A DNA stretch of 60,683 nucleotides, counting the filler, from Platydemus manokwari (lineage: Eukaryota), in the NCBI GenBank assembly GCA_037951405.1. It is 6 parts of 6 records of this genome, joined end to end, with 100 filler letters (N's around TTAATTAATTAA, not from the genome) between each part and the next. Parts side by side here need not be neighbours in the genome. Positions count along the whole stretch, not along the records: positions 48,582 to 60,683 come from JBBMOY010301114.1; 5 more parts are not named here. One strand, given 5' to 3'. The translations under genes were made by a program, and so were the position numbers. Shown here in pieces: positions 47,723-60,683 of the stretch (within the stretch, counting starts at the first letter, position 1; each line of letters starts with the position of its first letter). The notes under the pieces were generated by a model that made no database searches, had not been told where the DNA came from, and saw only the letters and a program-made list of their open reading frames with translations.

Positions 47723-50017
47723 TTGTAAATGAGATATCAAGTATTGATTAGCACATTTTATGAGGAAAGACAGAAAACTTTTAGCCAATCATAATAAATG
47801 CAAAACTAACATTCGCATTTTTTCTTATATCATGTATTATTAAACAATATCACAATTACTTGTAAGAGATTTTACTGTCTAAAAGTTGATTTTATATTTC
47901 TTGCGACAGTTCGTACCATGGGTAACAATTATTATGGTCATATAAATCAAAAATTTATGAAAACATCTAAATAAACAAATGATTTTTATGAATATTTCCA
48001 ATTATTTAAATTATCTTTCAAAAATAGAGTTTTATTTCCAGTTAGAAAAGTTGCTTAATAAAATATATCAATGAGACAGGTTCAGTGTAAATTTGTTGCT
48101 ATTCAATAAACTTGACATGTTCGGTTATCTTAAAATTCTTTTAATAACCATTACAGTATTTCCATCTTTGATTAAAATAACAAGAAAATTTATTTTTAAA
48201 TATCTCAAAAACTCAAACTAATAAGGCAAATATTTTTGAATTATTTATTTCTATTTTAAATAATCCACAAATTCATCACTATCTTTAATTAACTGTTAAA
48301 TCATTTTTAATAATCCTAAATAAATCATAAATTAATTAAAATTAATTTTTCTAAAAAATAAAATTGCATGTCAAGATGTTAGCCTATATGTTAACTGTTT
48401 GCTATTAGAAAATATTTGATTTATTTAACTTGTCCAGAAAAAAAATAATTAATTAAAACTGAAAAATAAAATTTAGATAATNNNNNNNNNNNNNNNNNNN
48501 NNNNNNNNNNNNNNNNNNNNNNNNNTTAATTAATTAANNNNNNNNNNNNNNNNNNNNNNNNNNNNNNNNNNNNNNNNNNNNAATAAGATAACCCAAATTA
48601 GATAACTTTAATAAGATTAAAATAAAATTTAATTAATAATTTTAAAGGTTGGCAAATTTAATGAATTTTTAAGTTTAAAGCACTTTTAAAATGATAAATA
48701 ATTAAAGAGCAAAGTAACAAAACTGATTAAAAATTGTAAAAGTGATGACAAATCCAAAGTGCAAAGTATCGAATCTCACCATCTATATAAGCTAATGCAT
48801 TTTCATCAAATTCACTCTTATGAAAAAAACTTATTTCGAAAGTATCGTGATAAGAAACTTTGAAGCTTTGACAAGGCAACAAGAAACTCTGAAACTTTAG
48901 GTAATAATATATTCAACAATTAGCAATAATCAAGCTTTAATAATATAATAACCAGCCTTTAATAACAATCGATAACAATAATATTTAAATTAAGTTAATT
49001 AACTGCTGTTCTAAAGGATCACCTCTTTGGACCCTGTGTTATAAAATTTATATAAAAATTGTATGAACTCAAAACACAAGTCCTCAGGTATCGGTTGAGA
49101 TAATTCATTTGCTGCAGTAAAATTGATTGAATTAAATTTATTTGAGTTAATTTATTATGTACAACTTGTGTGTAATATTATAAATAAATATTTGCATTAA
49201 ATTTTTGAGTGATTATTTTTATAGTTAATACATAATATTACATTCTTACAGAACTCACGCCGTTGAGTTGCAGATAATAAACATCAATAAAAACATCAAA
49301 GGCAATCCAACATAATGTTAATTATCGTGACTTTTCATTTCAGATAATCTACTGAGTAACCGTTTCTTATTCCGAAACTGATGCAAGACATCGGTTGTAA
49401 AAATCAATTTTAATATTGCTTAATCTTAATTTGAGTGAAATTGTTTAAACCCCACCAAATGCGTAAGTAATTTATCAATTCATATTTGTCCAAAGAGACA
49501 TCACCGACAAAATATTAATCAGAATATTAACAAACACTCTAATTAACACCGTTCTAGCTTAAATTTAAAATTTACAAAATAAATTTTCAATACATGCAAA
49601 AATTATTGTTAAATATAGGATTGATTCCAATGTTGGTCATTTTGAATTTTAAAAATACTCAAAAAGTTTCTTAATTAATCGCTTCATTCAAAAAACTTTT
49701 CATTACCATTATCAATCGAGAATTTTATTTAATAATATTTTTTCGAAATTTTGACAAATTACAATGTCTTACTTTCGATTTTTATGAGATTTTAGAAGTC
49801 TAATTTATAAATGTTAAAATATTGATTATTTTTGTAATAAAAAACGAAAAACTAACTAGATAATATAACTAATTACAGTAATGCATAAAATATTTTAATA
49901 ATTATTTAAGAACGATCGCTTATTGTTTATATGTCTTATTGTTTAATTTTAAAGTCGAAGTTCACTTAATTGTTAAAACAATTTTTAATACAAATGCATT
50001 GATAAGTAAATGAAAAA

Positions 50018-50802
50018 ATGCCAATCTATTTAGCATTAATTTCATATGAAGGTAAAATTATTTGTCAACATTCTTTACTTCTCTGTAATATCAATACATT
50101 TATCAATGAATTAAATCACAAAATTTCATGGAAAACAGAATACTTAACTCTTGTTTCTGATGCATTTTTTATTCACTATCATAATCAGAAACGATTAGTG
50201 TTCCTTTGTTTAACAGATCCAGTATGAAATTTAATATTGTAATAAATTGAAAATGAATTGCAGGATTTCGACAGATCGAAAAGTTTTTTGTTTCTCAATT
50301 ATTTGCATGAGAAAATAAAAAAGGTAAAAACCAAAGATATTCAATCATGGTTCAATCCACGGATCAAGATCGTATTCAATCGAATTTTAATTAACGCAGT
50401 CTGTAAATTTAACAGTAATAAGTTGCCAAAATCAGTTCAGAAAATCGATCTTATGGATAAAGGCATTCGATATTTAAGTTGGTTTGATTATGATAGTACA
50501 GATTATCTTAAAATTCCTTCATCATTTTAAGGCGAATTAAAATTAAGTGAGCCAAATATAACCAGTGATGATCAGATTCATTATAAAGTGCAAAATAATA
50601 TTTGGTTTTTTAATATTATTTTGATTCTAATGATTTTCAGGTTACAATTAAAAATGAAAGCACACCATTGCTCAAGACGAAATCAAAGAGTTTTTGCCGT
50701 CGATATGTTGGATTTAAAAAATATTGGACTGTTTTTGGATTTGTTTGTATTGTTTTGATAATTGTAATCGTTTTAATTGTGATATTGAGTATAAACAATT
50801 AG
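50018..50802 (+). CDS. VAMP7: VAMP7-like longin-domain tail-anchored protein, about 211 aa, with a degenerate SNARE motif
   Basis: Exons 50018-50221, 50264-50477, 50532-50587 and 50641-50802 are phase consistent. Longin domain MPIYLALISYEGKIICQH...FFIHY.NQKRLVFLCLTDPDFDRSKSFLFLN aligns by eye with VAMP7 (LFHYICQDRIVYLCITDDDFERSRAFNFLN). C-terminal TM WTVFGFVCIVLIIVIVLIVILSINN* follows a basic stretch. It may be a paralog rather than the ortholog. Confidence 0.78.
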
Positions 50803-52993
50803 ATTATTTTTCAGTGGTTTTGTGATTGAGATTATTGTGGTGGAATTTATTATGAGACTTTAAATAAAAACATTTTATTCTTTTTACATTTATGAAAATA
50901 TTTTTGATTTAATTTTATCGTTTATTATTGATTATGTGATTATGCTCGGTTTCAAAGTACCCTCAATATTATATTGAATTCATTTTGAACTGCATGCTAC
51001 TCATCAATTTGCCGATTTATTAATGCTTATTCCTACTTAAATATAATTTTGAGATTTATTATGTTATCACTTTGTCAAAACTTTCAGTGAAGAGCTCATT
51101 GTTTTTGTATTAATTCATAAATACTCAATTATTTATTATCGAATATTTTATATTAATGACCATAATTGCTTGTTTACAATCTCCTATCCATAGAAAAATA
51201 TTTCTCTCACTGATACGTACGTTAAAAATCACTTTAAAAAATTGTGCTTATGGCTGTTGCGACGAGATTTTAATATTCCATACAAATTCTGACTTAGATA
51301 CGATTTGTTGTTAAATATATTTCGAACAGCTAATGAGACATAAATATTATCTATTGTACTTTTGATAGTGTTATTATATGACGAATATCGATTATCAATA
51401 ATGTGCGCATTTGAATTTCACTGCTCATGGCCAATATGATAATAGTTGTAACTGAATAAGATTAAACTAAAAAACACAAAGTAAAGCATTTTGGTAAATT
51501 CATCACCATCGGATTACACCGATTTGAGTAAATATGAATCTCTTGACATTTTAGTAAGTAAAAATTCAAACCGGATTAATTGTTAAAATTGTCGATATCT
51601 TATTAATCAAAATGTTCTATACATTTTAAACAATATAATATCTAAAATTAAAAAGAATAAACAATGTACATGACTAATTCGATTTGGATATTTACTTGCT
51701 TAAGCTAAGATCCAAATTAGATGAAATTACTATATATATATATAGTAAATAATATTTAATTTTAATTATTTAATAAACTATTCTTCAAGTATTTTATGTA
51801 AAAGCATTGTATATTGAATGTAATTCATACATTACTGTCATCAGAAAAAATTTAATTTATCAAAAGATCTGAAATAAAAAGTGACTATTTTTCCTTGTAT
51901 TTCTAGACAAGTGAAAGTTTCAAACTAATAAAAGAAAGATTGCTTTAATAAACATGCATTTAAAACATAAAGTGCTCAAAATTGTGTAAAAATAAATTTT
52001 AACAACGTTTTTTGGGTGAAAAATAAAATCGAAGCTGGTAGTTATTGTGAAGATGTTTTTACTTGAATTTTACAAATCCTTATATTTAATGCTGAAAAAT
52101 TGTCATTCTTTAAATTGACTGACAATATGATTACGATAATTATATGAAGTGATGAAAGCAAATCATCATAAATTCGTTGTAAATTACCATAGAATATAAG
52201 ATAGCCTTGCGAATAAATTATTTACGAACATATGTATTCAACTTCATAAGCTACAATTTACAATGTTAGACATAATAGTGGAAGGACTTTAAATTTATCT
52301 AAACCTACAATTGTATCATTAAATAATATCAATTATCTTTTCATATTAAATTTATCAATCATTTATTACCCTGGAACACTAGATTATTGATATCGAATAT
52401 ACATAATTAAACAATCAAAATATCTAATATGCGTCATTTGATAATAATATAAGTTTTAAAAATGGAATATGTTACATAAATAAATTACGTTTTATAAAGT
52501 CTTTATTGATGTACATTTCTACCGAATTCTGAAGAATCATATAAATTACTTCGAGTTACAATTATATGCGATTAATCAGTGCAATTTTTAGCTAATATTT
52601 TCCATTAATAAAAAAACAATAAGTCCGGTTTATAAAGTTATGATATATATTTCTTGTTTGTTTAAATTTTGTTGAATATTTAAAATGACACGTCTGTAAT
52701 ATGACTCATATTTTCTCCATTAATAACATTTCGATTCATATGGTAAAATTTAATTCAATGTAAATTTCCCAAAATAAAAAATTTTCGTTTTTTAAATCTC
52801 ATAAAATATCGATTGAACACGAAATAAAACACAATAACCGGATAAAAACAAAGCTTAGATTATAATTTAATAAAATATTCTCAAATTTTCTTGAAAATCA
52901 TTTACAACAATAAACATTTTATTACCATAAATTATTACATAAATTTTATAGAAAAAATACATCTTGATATGATAAAAAAAATTATATATTAAT

Positions 52994-53880
52994 TCACAAA
53001 TCGATTTTGGAAAGTCTCGGACCTTTTTGTTTTTTAGTTTTCGTCTTTTGAGATTCCTTTTTTGAAACTGACTTTTGAATATTTTCCACATTTTCACTAA
53101 AAGGATTTACATAATCAATTTGCTTCTCTATCAAGCCCAACTCTTGTGATGCCTAAATTGGAATTAATACTGAATCAAAATCGATAATTAATTATACTAA
53201 ATTAAATAATTTTTGTTCATGATTAGGAAGCAATGAGGAATGAGTGGAGAATGCGAATGACCAATTGATTAATTGCTTTAAGTCATTAGTTTTTGCCATA
53301 AATGAATGAATGAGATCCGGAAAATACAAAGTCAGATCACAAAATAATGCACTGTTTTCGATACTAACTAGATATGCTAGAAATGTAATAAAAATAATTT
53401 ATTTAGAACTGTATCAAATATTAATAATAGTTTTTGAAATAAATAATAGTTTCTAAACGAGCAAGTTTTTAAATTCAATTTAAACCTTCATGCAATTCTT
53501 TGTCTAGAGGAATATCATCACCTGCAAGTATTGCATTTGTAACTAATAACTCCTGATTTATTTTCAAAATCTAAAATGAAAAATCACAGTAAATATTTTT
53601 TGAACAGACATAGCAACCTGAAAAATCTTTTTTAACATAATAGTGACTAAATCATATTGCTTGACACGAGAAGAATATTTTCGAATAGACTCAATTGCAT
53701 GTTTGTGCATAGCTCGTTTAGTTTCATAAACTTTTTTATCTAAAAAATCATTGAAGTCGAATAGAAAATTAACAAAATATTACCTCCTAAACCATTATCT
53801 TGATGAGACAAATTAATGAAAAAAGTAAAGTATAATAAAATAAGTAAAGACCAAAATCTTATTATTTTGAAATGATTCAT
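52994..53880 (-). CDS. CCDC134: Coiled-coil domain-containing protein 134 (ER-luminal), 213 aa, five exons
   Basis: Exons 53880-53784, 53739-53618, 53570-53486, 53376-53198 and 53152-52994 sum to 642 nt with consistent phases. Signal peptide, then KQYDLVTIMLKKIF, ENSALFCDLTLYFPD, LINWSFAF, LASQELGLIEK..DYVNPF and KGPRLSKIDL*, matching CCDC134 (ENTAFFGDVVLRFP, LMAQELGISEK, NPF, KGPRIS..SEL). Confidence 0.92.
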
Positions 53881-54949
53881 TATTTTCGATTAATTAAACA
53901 ACGTATAGTAAAATAATCTCTTATGAGTTAAAAAGTAAGAATAAAATATACTTGAATTTTTTATTGACAAAAAAAAGTTGGTTAGAAATAAATATTAATA
54001 ATTTGTTAATGAACAAAGTTTTAATTAACATTTTTATGAATACTTATCATTCTGACAATTTTTCTGATAAAACAAAATGAAATAATAATAGTTGAAATAA
54101 TATTGTTGACTATATTTATACTTATGATTAGTAACTTATAGGCAGGTTTAGTAATCTAGCTGATGTCACAATAAATTTCAACACACCTTAAAGATTTTGA
54201 AGTATATATTTTAAAAGATTATTTATTATGACATCGAAAATTCTGATCCTTTTGGCGGGTTATTTTATTAATTACAATTATGTATTTACCGAAAGTAATT
54301 AATTAATGTATTAATTGTTAATTTCCCGAAAATTTTAAGTTCATGAGTTTAGTTAAAGATTATATTGATCCTAAATTCACTGCAATTTGTTCTTGAGTAT
54401 GTCAAATTATTCATGAGAAATTATTTGTTATGAACTTTCATTGAAATCGAATTCAAGCCTTTCAAAAATTAGTGAGTGGTGATTGTTTCCGATGTCAATT
54501 TATAAATTTATTGATGCTAGATACTTTGTACTGAGGATCATCCAGTAAAATTTAATATTTTCGGTAATGTGTACCTTAATTATTATGGAATATTTAAAAG
54601 TTAATGGCACTTAAAATTTTAGAATGAGATAATGGTGAATTAGAAATTGTTTATTACTTGAACTTTATTAATTTTCCTTATTGATATTCTTTCTTGGGTG
54701 TTTTCCTATTATTTATATTTATATTTTATATTAATTTTTTAGTAAAATTCTTTCTTTATTTAGAATTTTCATTATATAAATAATAATACTATACATTAAT
54801 TTATAGTCTTTTTTAATAACAAACCAAATTTTTTACAATACCAAAATCATCAAATATTGTAAGTCGTTGTTAATAAATTACAAAGTTATGAGAGAAATAA
54901 ATCATATAATTATAAGTCAAGAATCGCAAAAAATATTGTCAATTTTATT

Positions 54950-57500
54950 GGGATTTAGAATTCTTGCCATCACTATTTACACTGGGCCATTGTTACCATA
55001 CGTGGTGAGATCTTTTCTCACTATCCAATACTTTGCTCGTCAAACCATATTTCTTTGACATATATATCTTGCCTATTCTGTTTCAGCATTCTTCCTCTTC
55101 CACGATTCATATGATTTAATGGTCTTAGGTATTTTTTCATTTTCTGGCATGCTGTCTTCACTATTTATGTTATACTCCTCCCAAAGTTCTTCCGGTTGTC
55201 TGATAAGAGGGGGTCCGTCTTTTTATATTCTTTTGTTGGGGTGACAATTTTTTTCGGACTTTATTAAACTTCTCTTTTTGAATTGGGCTTTTCAGTTTTT
55301 TGCGGTAAGAGATCATGTTGTCTGATAGTGAAAAAAGCTTACTCATATCATGCATATCCTTATTTACTTCCTGGACATTTTGTAACTCTTTCCAGACTGT
55401 CTGAATCACTATCACTTGGGAATTCTTATTTAACCTCACTTTTTATCCTCACCTATTGATCTTTCTGTTCTTTTACTCTTTTTTGGTTAATGCTTTCTCT
55501 TTTCTTTAACTGTTCATATGATTTCATTTTTTTCTTCATACTCTTTTTGTCGGCTCTTTCTTATACTTTTCTGACCTTCCTGTTGGAAGGATTACTTTCT
55601 TCTAGTTAAAGTATTGATCCCTCTTTCTTCTTTTAATTTCAATGAGATTAGTCTCCATGGTGTACTGCTGGGTTCTTCGATCAGTCTTTGTACAATGTCA
55701 TTCTGATCTAACTAACACATATTTGGAGTTGATACCATTTATTCTGGGTTTCATTGATGCGTTTTTGGGTCCAATATGAATATCAAATTACTAGTGATCA
55801 TCTTCTTATTTATCGGGATGTTTCTTTCAATAAAATACCTTCCATATTTGTCTAACTCGATGATGTAATGTTGGCGTCGCCCGGTATTTTCTTCTGTCAT
55901 TCCATGATATATATTCTTGTGTAGTTCGCCCAAGGTACATGATATCTGATACATTGGTTGTATCTAGGATTACAGTCAATCCTTGGAGTATTCACATTAT
56001 TGGTTTAAATTGAGGGTACTTTTTGTAGTCTACTTCTAATTGATCTTTCATGACGTCCTTCAGATAAATAGTGGTTGTCTAAGGTCAAACTCCGAAAGTC
56101 TCGTTATTTATTTGTGTATTAATGACCAATCCGTGTTTTGGTGTTACCTTGCACTCACAAACTATCTGTCATACAAATACAATTACATATACTTGATGTG
56201 ATACCCTATTTTAGGCAAAGACGGCATTAATATTCACGAATATTATCTAATTCCATAATTCCTCTACATCTTTTAAATACGACATCTGCACATAATAGAG
56301 TTATATTGATTTTCTTACGTTCCCTCTGATTTTCTGTGATTATTTTACTAATTTTGTATTGTCCTGCGATGGATTGTCTCAATTGTGATTGTTGTTGAAA
56401 GCTGGTAAGAGTGGATTATCATAGTTTGGTACCCCCTGTAATTTTCAACTCCAGGAGTCTTAAAATGGAGTTTCAAATTACTTGATAGATTTTTCCGTGC
56501 TGTTATTGTTACCGGGAATAAAGTGATGTGGATGCCCGTGGCTCTCCGTGTGTATCTTTTTTGAGATTTAGTACGAGTGTTAATAGACTTCATTGGTGGG
56601 CGGAGTCATTTTAATCATCTTCAGATCTCTGTTTTCAGTGTTGACTTTTAATTTATTTTGGAATTTAGTTTCATCTGTATTATATCTATACGTGATTCCA
56701 CTGAGGTGATTTGCTACTCCTCGATGGAGGTATCAATAAAATGCTGAAGTCAATTTTAGTTCCTCTTTTTGAAGGTCTTGTTTGAAGTTCTGTGCTCTGT
56801 AGACTTAGACATTCGCATTGATTTGCTTCTGGTTCGGTAGTACATATTTGTTCATCTCTAGAATTAATAATTGCTAAGTTCATGGCGTAGATTTTGATCT
56901 GCACTATCACCATTTACCATATATAACTAATGATATCAAACAAAACAATTCTCATATTACACATTCACTCAACCGTTGCAGACGTACTATAGTTTTACTA
57001 ATTGTAGAAGTTGACTTATTTTTGCAATGGTGGGGTAACTTCTGCTTGCTACCTGCTTTCTGTAGGTGTCATACTTGCATACTCTCTATCCTGGTTGCCT
57101 CAAGCATTCTGAAGAGGTTTGTTTGCTTTTGAAAATGTCTATGCACTACTACCCCTGACATTATAGCCACATTACTACTCATATTATTGATGCTACAATT
57201 AAATAATATGACTAATCTAAGGCAGAGGTGGCCAACTTTTGTGTACGTAAGATCGACTTTTCATTTGAATAACATCTCATGCGATAGACTAAAAATGGCT
57301 TCAAGATCGACCGGTTGGCCACCCCTGATCTAAGGAATAATCTAATTTTTCCTTTTCTTTCCTCATCATCGCATCCAATTGATCACAACCATCGATTATT
57401 TTCTAGTATTCTGGAATAGTAATGATAACCAGACAATGAAGGCACATCCTTTAAATTAATTTTTTTCCCGCCACCATCAGGTCCTCCCCGAGAAACTTGT
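54950..57500 (-). other. Decayed, intronless, coding-like island of unknown origin (TE or endogenous viral element)
   Basis: About 2.5 kb visibly richer in G+C than its flanks, with an A-rich minus strand and four successive broken minus-strand ORFs (56913-56686, 56593-56348, 55954-55751, 55439-55170). No motif recognised. Interrupted by the MITE at 57223. Confidence 0.4.
57223..57327 (-). mobile_element. 105-bp hAT MITE (family 1, copy B, inverted relative to copy A)
   Basis: Near-identical to the reverse complement of 27722-27844 minus 18 bp. Perfect TSD ATCTAAGG (57215-57222 and 57328-57335). Confidence 0.95.
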
Positions 57501-58869
57501 TAAAACAGAAAAATATAGTAAGATATCCTGATCAGAAATGTCTCTTACGAAAATTTTCTAAGTTTACTACAGATAAAATGATCCGAATTTTAGGTTTAAA
57601 AAATGACTACGAATGACTTTGATATCAATAAAATGATAGACGAATTAAAGAGGAATCATAGTATTATAGAATAAATTAAATAAAGAAAATGGTATAAAAC
57701 TGGGATATATTGATTCAGAAATATTAAATATGGAAATGAAGAATTTATTGTAAAATCTATTACGCCAATCATAGAAATAAATAATTTAACAGCATGAATT
57801 GAAAAATATTTTTAATTTAAAATACATAATTTTTAATTACAGGATTAAGGTAACAAATTTATTTTGTATTTGGTGTCTATGAATTCAAATTTGAAATTAC
57901 TCATAACTTATCAAAGATTACTTTATAGGGAACAAAAACACAAATAAAAAAGAAAAAGAGATTAAAACTTATTTTGAAATGTTGGAAAAACAAATCAACC
58001 TAATTTTAAAATTTGGTGGGTTCACCCACATAACATATTACAAAAATATTTACTAGCAATAATATTCTTCCAACATAACATAATCTCCTGGACATTTTAC
58101 AAACAACATACCATGCATACCTCCTTCAGTAAAGACGCAGAGAGTGCCGCGCATATTTAAAAAAATGAATATAATTCTAAGGCAATCAATTCACATCCAA
58201 GCAAAATCAAAAAATACTCAATTCAATCAACATTTGACGTATTTATTTAGTGATTCAATAAACGTTGATATTGATTTTTGGTTAGAAATCATCGTTATTG
58301 TTATTTTGACATTATTAATCTGGAACTTTTGAATTGAAAATATTATTGATTGATATTGATGTGGAGTTATTAATTGAATTAATATTTATTTGATTATTAT
58401 TATTATTGGTTATATTGACCGTTTTAAAGAGAGAGAAGAAATAATAAAAAAAATAACAAAATAAGATAATTAATTAATAATTATATACAAAAATGGCTTA
58501 TAAAAGGAATTTAAAGAATGCATGAAAATACAGTTTGTTCGCTTATCAGGCTAGTATAAATAACCGATCAGAATTTCATCACAACACAACAATTAAAACA
58601 ACAATACAAAAGCACTACATTAAAACACGATTTTTAAGAAGCGACTTTTGAACTGAATAGATAAGCCTGAAAAATTCAAACCACAGATATAGTTTCGAGA
58701 TACATTCATTGGTAGAGATAACTAATCGTTTCTACGTCGCGGAATAACGTTCATCGCTAATTTTACGAAACAACAGTAGTGGTTTTTTCGACTGGGAGGA
58801 AGAACATTTTGCGAAGGAAGTCATTAAAATAATTGTGCGAAGTAAGATTATTGTTTAATTATCAATAAT

Positions 58870-60045
58870 TTATTTTCACTATCTCATAACAATAATAATT
58901 TAATTGTTTCATATTTTATGCAATAAATTAATATTTTCCTATATTGACCATCATAATGTAACTTTTTAAAGTAATTTCTTTTCAAATTTATTTAACTCTA
59001 TGAGATTAACATTAGTAACTCATAAATTTGAAAATATTGAAAGTGTTGGAAAAATTTATAGTATTTTAAATTTCATATTACTAGAAAGATCAATTGAAGA
59101 AATCGGAAAATTAATAGGTTGGGTACCCGATAAAAATAAAGTAGATCCAAATTAACACAATAAAGCTTTTTAAAGAAGAAAAGCTTTATATAATTTAAAA
59201 GAAGGATTAAATACTGATAAGTCTGTTTTAGTAATTTAATTAAACAGATGATCAAATTTTATTAATATTACAAAATTATCAGTATTTAACAGCTGATAGC
59301 TTTATTAAAAAATAGTCTGAGATATATACTAGTAGGATTGAAAGATAAAATGGAATACACAGAAAATAATTAAAAGTTTATTCAGATAATTGGTAATAAC
59401 ATAATTAAATAAAATAAGAGTAATTTATGTAAGCAATTTAAAAACAAATCACTATTAAATATCTTAAATTTTCAAAATTTATGCTCAATATTTTGTTTAG
59501 ATGTTAGTGCTCAAGATGAAATATTAATAATAAACGACTGTAATTTAAATATAGAAATAGAAAAAGACCCTGATTTAGAATGTAAAACTGCAGTAAATAT
59601 TGTAGTGTATTAGAAGAAATAATAATTAAAGGGTGAAAGTATACTATCCAAGTTAAGTTATATATTTTTTATTAAAAAGTGAGTAATGATGAAAAACTTT
59701 TAAAAGAAATAATTAAAAATAAATAACCAAAATTAATTAATTGCAATGGAGAATAAATTTATACGAATAAAAAATTTTAAATTAACGAAATTAGATAATT
59801 CTTAATAAAGATATTACAAAAAATAAAAATAAGGTGGTGTTTTACCTTTATTGGCGGCTTTACCAGCAATAATATCAGGTTTAGGTGGAGCTGCAGGAGT
59901 ATGTGAAAGAATCACAGTTGTCTTAAATCAAGCAAAACAAGCTTAAAAAACAGATGTTGAAACTGATTAAAGAAAAGAAGGATTACCTTAACAAAAGGGA
60001 TGTAACAAAAAAAATACAGGGGCTGGTATCTATTTACCGTATTTG
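58870..60045 (+). mobile_element. Decayed Polinton/Maverick (adintovirus-like) capsid module: major capsid protein remnant plus a GGxLP-type small structural protein remnant
   Basis: NVTF*SNFFSNLFNSMRLTL...FENIESVGKIYSILNFI...LIGWVPD...NKAF*RRKALYN, LRYILVGLKD and FQNLCSIFCLDVSAQDEIL resemble Polinton double-jelly-roll MCP motifs. Downstream are GGVLPLLAALPAIISGLGGAAG (from 59833) and GAGIYLPY. Intronless, with many stops and deletions. Confidence 0.7.
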
Positions 60046-60056
60046 ATGGCATATAT

Positions 60057-60508
60057 CAGAGGTTCTCAAAAAAAATTTTCTCAAAGACGCCTTGCCATGT
60101 TTTTCGGTTTTGGGTAGACCCTTTGATATACACTATAAAAGATTTAAATTTCAACAATAGTGAGGTTCTTTTAATATGAAAAAGCAAAAAAACAAAACAT
60201 TTTAATATAATTTATATATGCCTAATTACCAGTTTATATTATAATTAAATATTTACCTATTTAAAACTAATGATCGCATAAATAATGTTAGCTTTATTGC
60301 CGAGAAAGAAGCTTAGCACCAGTGCGAATATCCCGATTTGATAATGCTACAAGGTTAAACTTTTATAATTTTTTAAAATATTAAAATTGTATCAATTATA
60401 CAGTTTTTGGCAATTTTTGAAATATTCTTCCCATTGAAGCCCAAGTATTTTAACCCACGTAGACCTTTTGCAGGTCTTCATCGATATGGGCCGCTTTGGA
60501 AATTACTG
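60057..60508. mobile_element. 452-bp non-autonomous hAT element inserted at the end of the Polinton remnant
   Basis: Ends CAGAGGTTCTCAAA / TTTGGAAATTACTG (degenerate TIRs). Perfect 8-bp TSD GCATATAT (60049-60056 and 60509-60516). Confidence 0.8.
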
Positions 60509-60683
60509 GCATATATGATGTATTCATTTACCAAAACCTTAAATCAAAGAATCGCCTTGTGTCTATTATATGAAGATGAGACCGCCTTTGTCTAATTTTC
60601 ATAGTGTCTGTGAGTCTAAATAATTTGTATCTCTGTAATTGTGTATTTGTATGTCGATAATAAGTCACAACATAACTCTCTCT

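What the first reader, a model, noticed from the sequence alone, without database searches (positions are those of the whole stretch)
50018..50802. Animal 'phytolongin-like' protein: VAMP7 longin domain plus TM anchor with the R-SNARE motif eroded
Seen: an intact longin domain and tail anchor, but the middle reads NKLPKSVQKIDLMDKGIRYLSELKLSEPNITSDDQIHYKVTIKNESTPLLKTKSKSF. Only KIDLMDKG recalls VAMP7 NIDLVAQRG: the zero-layer Arg appears as Lys, the N-terminal heptads (QVDELKGIM) are absent, and prolines interrupt the helix. Known: longin-plus-TM proteins without a SNARE motif (phytolongins) derive from VAMP7-type genes in land plants, and SEC22a/c are non-SNARE longins of a different subfamily. 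Inference: an independently evolved non-fusogenic VAMP7 derivative in an animal, possibly a trafficking adaptor or SNARE regulator. The frame is intact across four exons, suggesting it is functional.
Basis: partly seen in the sequence, partly recalled or inferred. Interest (0 to 1): 0.72.

Follow-up and report, generated by a model that had tools for sequence, protein, structure and literature searches.

The report
VAMP7-derived longin with decayed SNARE core
A small four-exon gene encodes a membrane-anchored relative of the vesicle-fusion protein VAMP7 whose fusion-driving helix has decayed in place; it resembles plant phytolongins and the human VAMP7j splice form, but expression and relatives could not be checked.

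Summary
Exons 50018-50221, 50264-50477, 50532-50587 and 50641-50802 (+) join through GT..AG introns of 42, 54 and 53 nt into a 211-codon frame. The N-terminal part matches only VAMP7 longin domains, weakly but colinearly. A 21-residue tail anchor closes the protein. No exon shows a Synaptobrevin or R-SNARE signal.

All three introns sit where human VAMP7 (SYBL1) introns sit, in the same phases: 68|69 phase 0, inside codon 140 versus 145 phase 1, and phase 0 just before VTIK versus SVTFK. So this is a true VAMP7 descendant, and the splice model is supported by homology.

The small exon 3 corresponds to the human exon that carries the zero-layer arginine. It is four codons shorter, has no arginine, carries a proline and is not alignable.

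All indels are in frame, which argues against a pseudogene.

Three things could not be tested. There was no RNA run, no relative in any collection, and only this piece of the genome, so a canonical VAMP7 elsewhere is unknown. Non-SNARE longins are already known, so this is a new variant of a known kind.

The parts
50018..50221 (+). Exon 1, codons 1-68: longin domain strands b1-b5 and helix a1
   Evidence: phmmer against PDB hits only VAMP7 longin chains (E 0.02-0.03), with model residues 2-67 aligned to VAMP7 2-67 without gaps, 18/66 identical. Pfam Longin scores 16.5 bits, E 0.0079, below the gathering score of 26.2. Atlas features score 0.93 to Longin clusters. AF2 on this exon alone gives b-b-a-b-b-b at pLDDT 60. 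Foldseek hits are weak and are nearly all longin/roadblock folds, including VAMP7.
50222..50263 (+). Intron 1, 42 nt, GT..AG, phase 0 between codons 68 and 69
   Evidence: Same position and phase as the human SYBL1 exon 3/4 junction (..T D D | D F E R.. versus ..T D P | D F D R..), from the primers and peptide MD2 in PMC3123573.
50264..50477 (+). Exon 2, codons 69-139 plus one base: longin helices a2 and a3, then a remnant of the N-terminal SNARE layers (about residues 119-139)
   Evidence: Residues 64-81 share 11/18 identities with human VAMP7 64-81, ungapped, across the junction. FLN sits at 78-80 in both. AF2 on the exon alone gives helices at 72-88 and 100-117, and residues 126-139 have pLDDT below 50. 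On its own the exon gets no Pfam, PDB or Atlas recognition.
50478..50531 (+). Intron 2, 54 nt, GT..AG, phase 1 inside codon 140
   Evidence: The human SYBL1 exon 5/6 junction is phase 1 inside codon D145 (primers VAMP7a-R, VAMP7b-R and VAMP7i-R). Retaining this intron gives a stop after 17 codons.
50532..50587 (+). Exon 3, 56 nt, codons 140-158: equivalent of human exon 6, the zero-layer exon, degenerate
   Evidence: Same entry and exit phases (1 and 0) as human exon 6, but 19 codons against 23. It has no arginine and carries Pro147. It shares 0-1 of 17 identities with human 150-166 in colinear registers. Skipping it shifts the frame to a stop (read directly from the sequence).
50588..50640 (+). 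Intron 3, 53 nt, GT..AG, phase 0 before codon 159
   Evidence: Human exon 7 starts in phase 0 with S-V-T-F-K (primers VAMP7j-F and VAMP7b-R). Model exon 4 starts with V-T-I-K.
50641..50802 (+). Exon 4, codons 159-211 plus stop: short C-terminal SNARE remnant, a Lys/Ser-rich juxtamembrane stretch about 10 residues longer than in VAMP7, the transmembrane anchor (50728-50790) and a 3-residue luminal tail
   Evidence: 53 codons, the same number as human exons 7+8 (168-220). Pfam Synaptobrevin matches only profile positions 59-87, the transmembrane part, at E 1.7 and 8.9 bits.
50863..50868 (+). AATAAA, a possible polyadenylation signal 61 nt after the stop
   Evidence: This motif is common by chance in 24% GC DNA, so the support is weak.

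Best explanation
This is an intact, frame-maintained gene descended from VAMP7. It keeps the longin domain and the C-terminal tail anchor. The 60-residue R-SNARE core between them has decayed in place. The N-terminal layers are recognisable but interrupted by small indels. The exon that should carry layers -1 to +4 and the zero-layer arginine is four codons shorter, polar, proline-containing and without arginine. Only a short piece before layer +8 is still similar. The spacer to the membrane is about 10 residues longer than in VAMP7. Such a protein cannot zipper a 16-layer four-helix bundle up to the membrane, so it is most likely non-fusogenic (inferred). It would then work through its longin domain on a membrane, as a sorting or regulatory factor like human VAMP7j or the plant phytolongins (inferred by analogy). 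The surviving N-terminal segment may still fold back onto the a1-b3 groove of the longin domain, where L43 and T44 are identical to VAMP7 and Y45 is replaced by Leu (speculative).
For: VAMP7-specific colinearity covers residues 2-81. Three of three introns coincide in position and phase with human SYBL1 introns. No Synaptobrevin signal is found on any exon or stop-free stretch except the transmembrane segment. In a 16-layer threading no register gives more than 8/15 hydrophobic layers; the one register that reaches 9/15 runs into the anchor; the register from L122 to K174 gives 5/7 in the N-terminal half, 1/8 in the C-terminal half and Glu at the zero layer. None of 121 frame-preserving GT-AG paths creates a SNARE motif, and nothing SNARE-like lies downstream. 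All inferred indels are multiples of three, and the linker frame stays open at P about 2e-3. Each conserved exon of the neighbouring CCDC134-like gene passes the Pfam gathering score on its own (31, 48 and 34 bits). So exon-wise scanning has power here, and the lineage is not generally hyper-divergent. Precedents are phytolongins, which keep heptads only in the N-terminal half, and VAMP7j.
Against: No RNA data exist: the only run holding the locus is unspliced DNA, probably the source of the assembly. No orthologue or paralogue could be retrieved, so there is no dN/dS, no phylogeny and no test for a separate canonical VAMP7. The joined protein was never scanned or folded, so all domain scores are exon-wise and weak. 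Pfam Longin is below its gathering score. The alignment of residues 115-141 and 173-188 to human VAMP7 rests on my recall of the human sequence, checked only for consistency with fragments printed in papers. The N-terminal heptad pattern (5/7) is not significant on its own. Loss of fusogenicity is inferred from sequence, not shown.
Confidence: 0.6

Rival explanations
1. It is still a working, very divergent R-SNARE, possibly the only VAMP7 of a fast-evolving lineage, that pairs with co-diverged Q-SNAREs.
For: Overall length and exon architecture are conserved (211 versus 220 aa). Short similar pieces remain at both ends of the core (KGI, R, VTIK..S..L). The longin domain is itself only 27% identical to human, so general divergence is high for this gene.
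Against: There is no Arg or Lys at any zero-layer position with a supporting heptad pattern, and at most 8/15 hydrophobic layers. Prolines lie at 147 and 167. The core is net 9 residues shorter, which is not a multiple of 7, and the juxtamembrane spacer is longer. The neighbouring gene is well conserved, so the divergence is gene-specific.
Confidence: 0.12
2. It is a decaying or silent duplicate (unprocessed pseudogene) whose frame is still open by chance.
For: There is no expression evidence and no relatives in 1.84 billion representative proteins. Exon GC (0.26-0.29) is barely above intron GC.
Against: 211 open codons have P about 5e-9, and the diverged linker alone about 2e-3. All three splice-site pairs are intact, all inferred indels are in frame, and the tail anchor is kept in frame behind the most diverged exon. 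Divergence deep enough to erase the similarity of exon 3 would be expected to bring stops in 24% GC DNA.
Confidence: 0.1
3. The gene model is wrong and the true transcript carries a normal SNARE motif from other exons.
For: Junctions are predicted only. Many GT/AG pairs exist in AT-rich DNA: 121 frame-preserving paths were counted.
Against: All three junctions coincide with human VAMP7 intron positions and phases and are flanked by conserved residues. Only about 300 nt separate the longin domain from the anchor, and no frame there encodes heptads with Arg. No Synaptobrevin-like stretch lies within 2 kb downstream.
Confidence: 0.03

Closest known systems
Human VAMP7j (SYBL1 splice isoform skipping exons 5 and 6; PMC3123573, PMC10743575)
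   Same: It is an animal VAMP7 product consisting of the longin domain, a short non-SNARE hinge and the original transmembrane anchor. It is non-fusogenic and acts in cargo (L1CAM) trafficking. The part missing or disabled covers the same exons: the equivalents of exons 5-6.
   Different: [quoted passage not shown] Here the architecture is fixed in the gene. The core is kept at nearly full length (about 69 residues) but is degenerate, and the N-terminal part is the better preserved. Y45, the regulatory phosphosite of VAMP7 and VAMP7j, is Leu here.
Phytolongins (plant Phyl1/Phyl2; PMC2779197, PMC4861013)
   Same: They have a longin domain, a 60-90-residue central region without a detectable SNARE motif, and a C-terminal transmembrane anchor. 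They derive from a VAMP7-type gene. Heptad-like hydrophobic positions survive only in the N-terminal half, and there is no zero-layer Arg.
   Different: Phytolongins descend from the plant-specific VAMP72 clade. This gene shares intron positions with animal SYBL1 and sits beside a CCDC134-like gene, so any likeness is convergent.
Sec22a / Sec22c (vertebrates) and the kinetoplastid Sec22-related longin without a SNARE domain (PMC5399786)
   Same: They are longin proteins with membrane anchors that have lost the SNARE motif.
   Different: They belong to the Sec22 subfamily. Exon 1 here hits only VAMP7 chains at E up to 10. Sec22b and Ykt6 structures are, to my knowledge, also in the PDB and did not appear.
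Canonical VAMP7 / TI-VAMP
   Same: Longin domain residues 2-81 are colinear. Three intron positions are shared. Total length is similar, and both have a tail anchor with a basic and aromatic juxtamembrane stretch.
   Different: There is no Synaptobrevin profile match, no zero-layer Arg, indels and prolines lie in the core, and the linker to the membrane is longer.

Membership tests
Longin domain (Pfam PF13774; VAMP7-type) | Profile match at or above the gathering score | tested here: inconclusive
Exon 1 alone scores 16.5 bits against a cut-off of 26.2, over profile positions 7-40 of 84. Exon 2 alone gives nothing.
Longin domain (Pfam PF13774; VAMP7-type) | b1-b2-a1-b3-b4-b5-a2-a3 topology over about 118 residues | tested here: met
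   AF2 on the exons separately gives strands at 4-8, 14-19, 39-46, 49-55 and 60-64, a helix at 25-36, and helices at 72-88 and 100-117. Confidence is low (pLDDT about 60) and the domain was folded in two pieces. Foldseek hits are weak but are nearly all longin/roadblock folds, VAMP7 included.
VAMP7 subfamily | Sequence closer to VAMP7 than to Sec22 or Ykt6 longins | tested here: met
   The only PDB hits at E up to 10 are four VAMP7 entries. Residues 64-81 share 11/18 identities with the VAMP7 peptide of PMC3123573.
VAMP7 subfamily | Gene structure shared with SYBL1 | tested here: met
   Intron 68|69 is phase 0 in both. The phase 1 intron lies inside codon 140 here and 145 in human. The phase 0 intron lies just before VTIK here and SVTFK in human. 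The human junctions were derived by my own translation of junction-spanning primers.
R-SNARE (Pfam PF00957 Synaptobrevin) | Profile match over the SNARE core | tested here: not met
   Only the transmembrane part matches (profile 59-87, E 1.7-1.9). There are no hits for the exon 2 tail, exon 3 or the start of exon 4. Caveat: the test was exon-wise, so its power is reduced.
R-SNARE (Pfam PF00957 Synaptobrevin) | Arginine at the zero layer within 16 heptad layers, with layer +8 about 10 residues from the transmembrane segment | tested here: not met
   The exon-6 equivalent contains no Arg. The best in-range threading gives 8/15 hydrophobic layers. Arg137 at the zero layer gives 3/15.
Tail-anchored protein | A single C-terminal hydrophobic segment with a very short luminal tail | tested here: met
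   Residues 189-207 have a mean Kyte-Doolittle score of 3.75, and 3 residues follow the segment.
Phytolongins | Descent from plant VAMP72 | not testable with these tools
   No longin sequences could be fetched for a tree. The context (animal-type intron positions, CCDC134-like neighbour) argues for an independent origin.

The most novel reading that the evidence does not exclude
An animal lineage has fixed in its genome a dedicated, non-fusogenic, membrane-anchored VAMP7 longin. This would be convergent with plant phytolongins and would hard-wire what primates achieve with the VAMP7j splice form. The zero-layer exon would have decayed in place while the longin domain, the reading frame and the anchor stayed under selection. 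It would then act as a longin-based sorting factor or as an inhibitory, half-zippering SNARE.
Probability: 0.4. Interest if true: 0.6.

Novelty: new variant of a known kind. Interest (0 to 1): 0.45.

Why it matters
Non-SNARE longins are known from plants (phytolongins), from the Sec22 branch (Sec22a/c, kinetoplastids) and as human VAMP7 splice isoforms. A stand-alone animal gene in which the VAMP7 SNARE core decayed exon by exon would be a third, independent route to the same architecture. That would strengthen the idea that a membrane-tethered longin domain has a fusion-independent job. The shared intron positions give an unusually clear picture of which part was released from constraint. The case remains a single sequence without expression data or relatives, so its value now is as a lead.

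Tried and rejected
These searches and tests gave nothing useful.

- Exhaustive HMMER of exon 1 against 1.84 billion representatives gave 0 hits at E<=1e-3, not even the protein itself.
- The word search with exon 1 found no candidate sharing three 5-mers.
- JGI metagenome scans with exons 1 and 2 found nothing.
- The RNA run search found only one DNA run. Its contig covers the locus unspliced and is identical, so it is probably the source and not independent.
- PDB searches with exon 2, its first 27 residues and exon 4 found nothing relevant.
- The Atlas search with exon 2 returned LRR noise at low recognition and was discarded.
- Rfam, tRNA, repeat and tandem-repeat scans of the piece found nothing.
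- Paper searches for VAMP7 core peptides found only the antibody peptides of PMC3123573, and the supplements held no sequences.

It gives local similarity: IDL, then G and R, or L139, L142 and N148 in the ungapped variant. But it needs two compensating shifts of about 15 residues and contradicts the intron-anchored alignment.

The joined model was built only inside scripts from window.fa, for descriptive statistics.

Full report
**1. What is there**

The piece (48582-60683) is 22-35% GC. On the + strand an ATG at 50018 opens a frame. With three GT..AG introns (50222-50263, 50478-50531, 50588-50640; 42, 54 and 53 nt) it runs through 636 nt to a stop at 50800-50802, giving 211 residues.

The frame is not a chance product. 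Stops occur at 0.087 per codon in the surrounding DNA, so 211 open codons have P about 5e-9. The 69 codons between longin domain and anchor have P about 2e-3, and 30 of 20000 shuffles stay open.

The neighbouring gene on the minus strand (52994-53880) has five exons and introns of 44, 47, 109 and 45 nt. The proposed introns therefore have the local size.

**2. Identity of the ends**

- Exon 1 hits four PDB sequences at E up to 10, and all are VAMP7 longin domains (E 0.02-0.03).
- Model residues 2-67 align to VAMP7 2-67 without a gap, with 18/66 identical.
- Pfam Longin is seen on exon 1 at 16.5 bits, below the cut-off of 26.2.
- Language-model features point to Longin clusters at 0.93.
- An antibody peptide printed in PMC3123573 gives human VAMP7 residues 64-81. 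Model 64-81 matches it in 11 of 18 positions, ungapped and with the same numbering, across the exon 1/exon 2 junction.
- Folded alone, exon 1 gives strand-strand-helix-strand-strand-strand and exon 2 gives helices at 72-88 and 100-117. Together this is the longin topology, at low confidence (pLDDT about 60).
- Foldseek matches are weak (E 0.04-0.4) but are almost all longin/roadblock folds, including VAMP7.
- Exon 2 on its own is not recognised by Pfam, PDB or the Atlas.
- The C-terminus is a clear tail anchor: residues 189-207 have a mean hydropathy of 3.75, followed by a three-residue tail.

**3. Gene structure shared with human VAMP7**

PMC3123573 prints junction-spanning primers for SYBL1 isoforms. 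I translated them by hand and combined them with the numbered peptides and the statement that exons 1-4 encode residues 1-114. They give these human junctions:

- phase 0 between D68 and D69 (exon 3/4);
- phase 0 after L114 (exon 4/5);
- phase 1 inside codon D145 (exon 5/6);
- phase 0 immediately before S-V-T-F-K (exon 6/7).

The model's introns are:

- phase 0 between P68 and D69, the identical place, flanked by TD.|DF.RS in both;
- phase 1 inside codon S140;
- phase 0 immediately before V-T-I-K.

Three of three introns therefore coincide in phase and, given the local alignments, in place. This supports the predicted splicing and shows descent from a VAMP7 gene rather than a retrocopy.

It also fixes the exon correspondences:

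| Model exon | Human equivalent | Length difference |
|---|---|---|
| exon 2 | exons 4+5 | five codons shorter |
| exon 3 | exon 6 | 19 codons against 23 |
| exon 4 | exons 7+8 | 53 codons in both |

**4. State of the SNARE core**

- *Profile scans.* Pfam Synaptobrevin matches only the transmembrane part of exon 4 (profile 59-87, E 1.7). Nothing is found on the tail of exon 2, on exon 3, or on any stop-free stretch across them.
- *The zero-layer exon.* Human exon 6 carries layers -1 to +4 and R150; the peptide for residues 150-166 is. Its equivalent here has no arginine, has Pro147, is polar, and shares 0-1 of 17 residues with that peptide in colinear registers.
- *Layer threading.* I threaded a 16-layer template through residues 101-191, using spacing from my knowledge of VAMP2 layers. 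It never gives more than 8 of 15 hydrophobic layers, except in a register that runs into the anchor. The register from L122 to K174 has 5/7 in the N-terminal half, 1/8 in the C-terminal half and Glu at the zero layer. The 5/7 is not significant by itself.
- *Similar pieces that remain.* Using the human sequence as I recall it, the exon-5 equivalent keeps N-K..K.V, I-D, K-G-I and R, with indels of about -4, +1 and -2. The start of exon 4 (VTIK..S..L) resembles human 169-178. My recall is consistent with every fragment the papers print: A-Q-L at 112-114, R-N-I-D-L-V-A-Q at 142-149, residues 150-166, S-V-T-F-K, and the composition of a scrambled 12-mer. The spacer from there to the anchor is about 10 residues longer and rich in Lys and Ser. 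These two alignments are inference.
- *No hidden motif.* Only about 300 nt lie between longin domain and anchor, and all three frames were read. Of 7 one-intron and 114 two-intron GT-AG paths that keep the frame into the anchor, none produces a heptad-regular stretch with Arg. Nothing Synaptobrevin-like lies in the 2 kb downstream.

**5.

That pairing has real local similarity. But it puts the zero layer in the exon-5 equivalent, 10-11 codons away from where the shared phase-1 intron places it, and it needs two compensating shifts of about 15 residues.

The intron-anchored alignment instead pairs it with the N-terminal layers. So the N-terminal part is what partly survives, not what is absent. 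Both readings agree that no functional 16-layer motif remains.

**6. Is it alive?**

All inferred length changes are multiples of three. All splice sites are intact. The anchor stays in frame behind the most diverged exon. This argues for selection on a full-length, membrane-anchored product.

Each conserved exon of the CCDC134-like neighbour passes Pfam's cut-off on its own (31.3, 47.8 and 34 bits). So the genome is not generally hyper-divergent, and exon-wise scanning can detect conserved domains here. The weak scores of this gene are gene-specific. That fits a released or redirected paralogue better than a housekeeping VAMP7, but I could not look for a second copy.

No RNA run exists in the index. 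The single holder is an unspliced, identical DNA contig and is probably the source. No relative was found in 1.84 billion representative proteins, in the word search, or in JGI metagenomes.

**7. Mechanism**

- *Shown:* the architecture is longin + degenerate spacer + tail anchor, and the gene descends from VAMP7.
- *Inferred:* it is unable to form a full trans-SNARE bundle. It would instead act through the longin domain held on a membrane.
- *Groove residues:* the a1-b3 groove residues named in PMC2878558 are partly kept. L43, T44 and I36 are identical, and Y45 is Leu.
- *Speculative:* the surviving N-terminal segment could still fold back, as proposed for phytolongins and for VAMP7b. A half-motif might also nucleate but not complete SNARE assembly, which would make it inhibitory.

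**8. Comparison and novelty**

The closest precedents are:

- human VAMP7j, which has longin + hinge + anchor and regulates L1CAM transport;
- phytolongins;
- Sec22a/c and a kinetoplastid Sec22-like longin.

I found no report of a dedicated VAMP7-derived non-SNARE gene in animals in the searchable library. That is not proof of absence. I rate it a new variant of a known kind, of moderate interest, limited by the lack of expression data, relatives and genome-wide context.

Noticed in passing
window 52994-53880 (-): A five-exon gene, convergent with the longin gene, encodes a 213-aa protein with a signal-peptide-like N-terminus. Three of its exons match Pfam PF15002 (ERK-JNK_inhib, the CCDC134 family as I recall it) colinearly at 31, 48 and 34 bits. 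Its introns are 44, 47, 109 and 45 nt. This is consistent with an animal genome.
   Followed up: partly
window 54600-57600: A segment of about 3 kb has higher GC (0.28-0.35 against 0.22-0.25) and a strong T excess on the + strand. It has no long ORFs, no Pfam hits, no repeats and no RNA families. It is unexplained and may be a degraded mobile element or an untranslated or rapidly evolving gene.
   Followed up: partly
window 49885-49908 and 50076-50093: A second short contig (847 nt) of run X1 matches two stretches of 18-24 nt on opposite strands. This is probably low-complexity AT-rich similarity and has no bearing on the gene.
   Followed up: no
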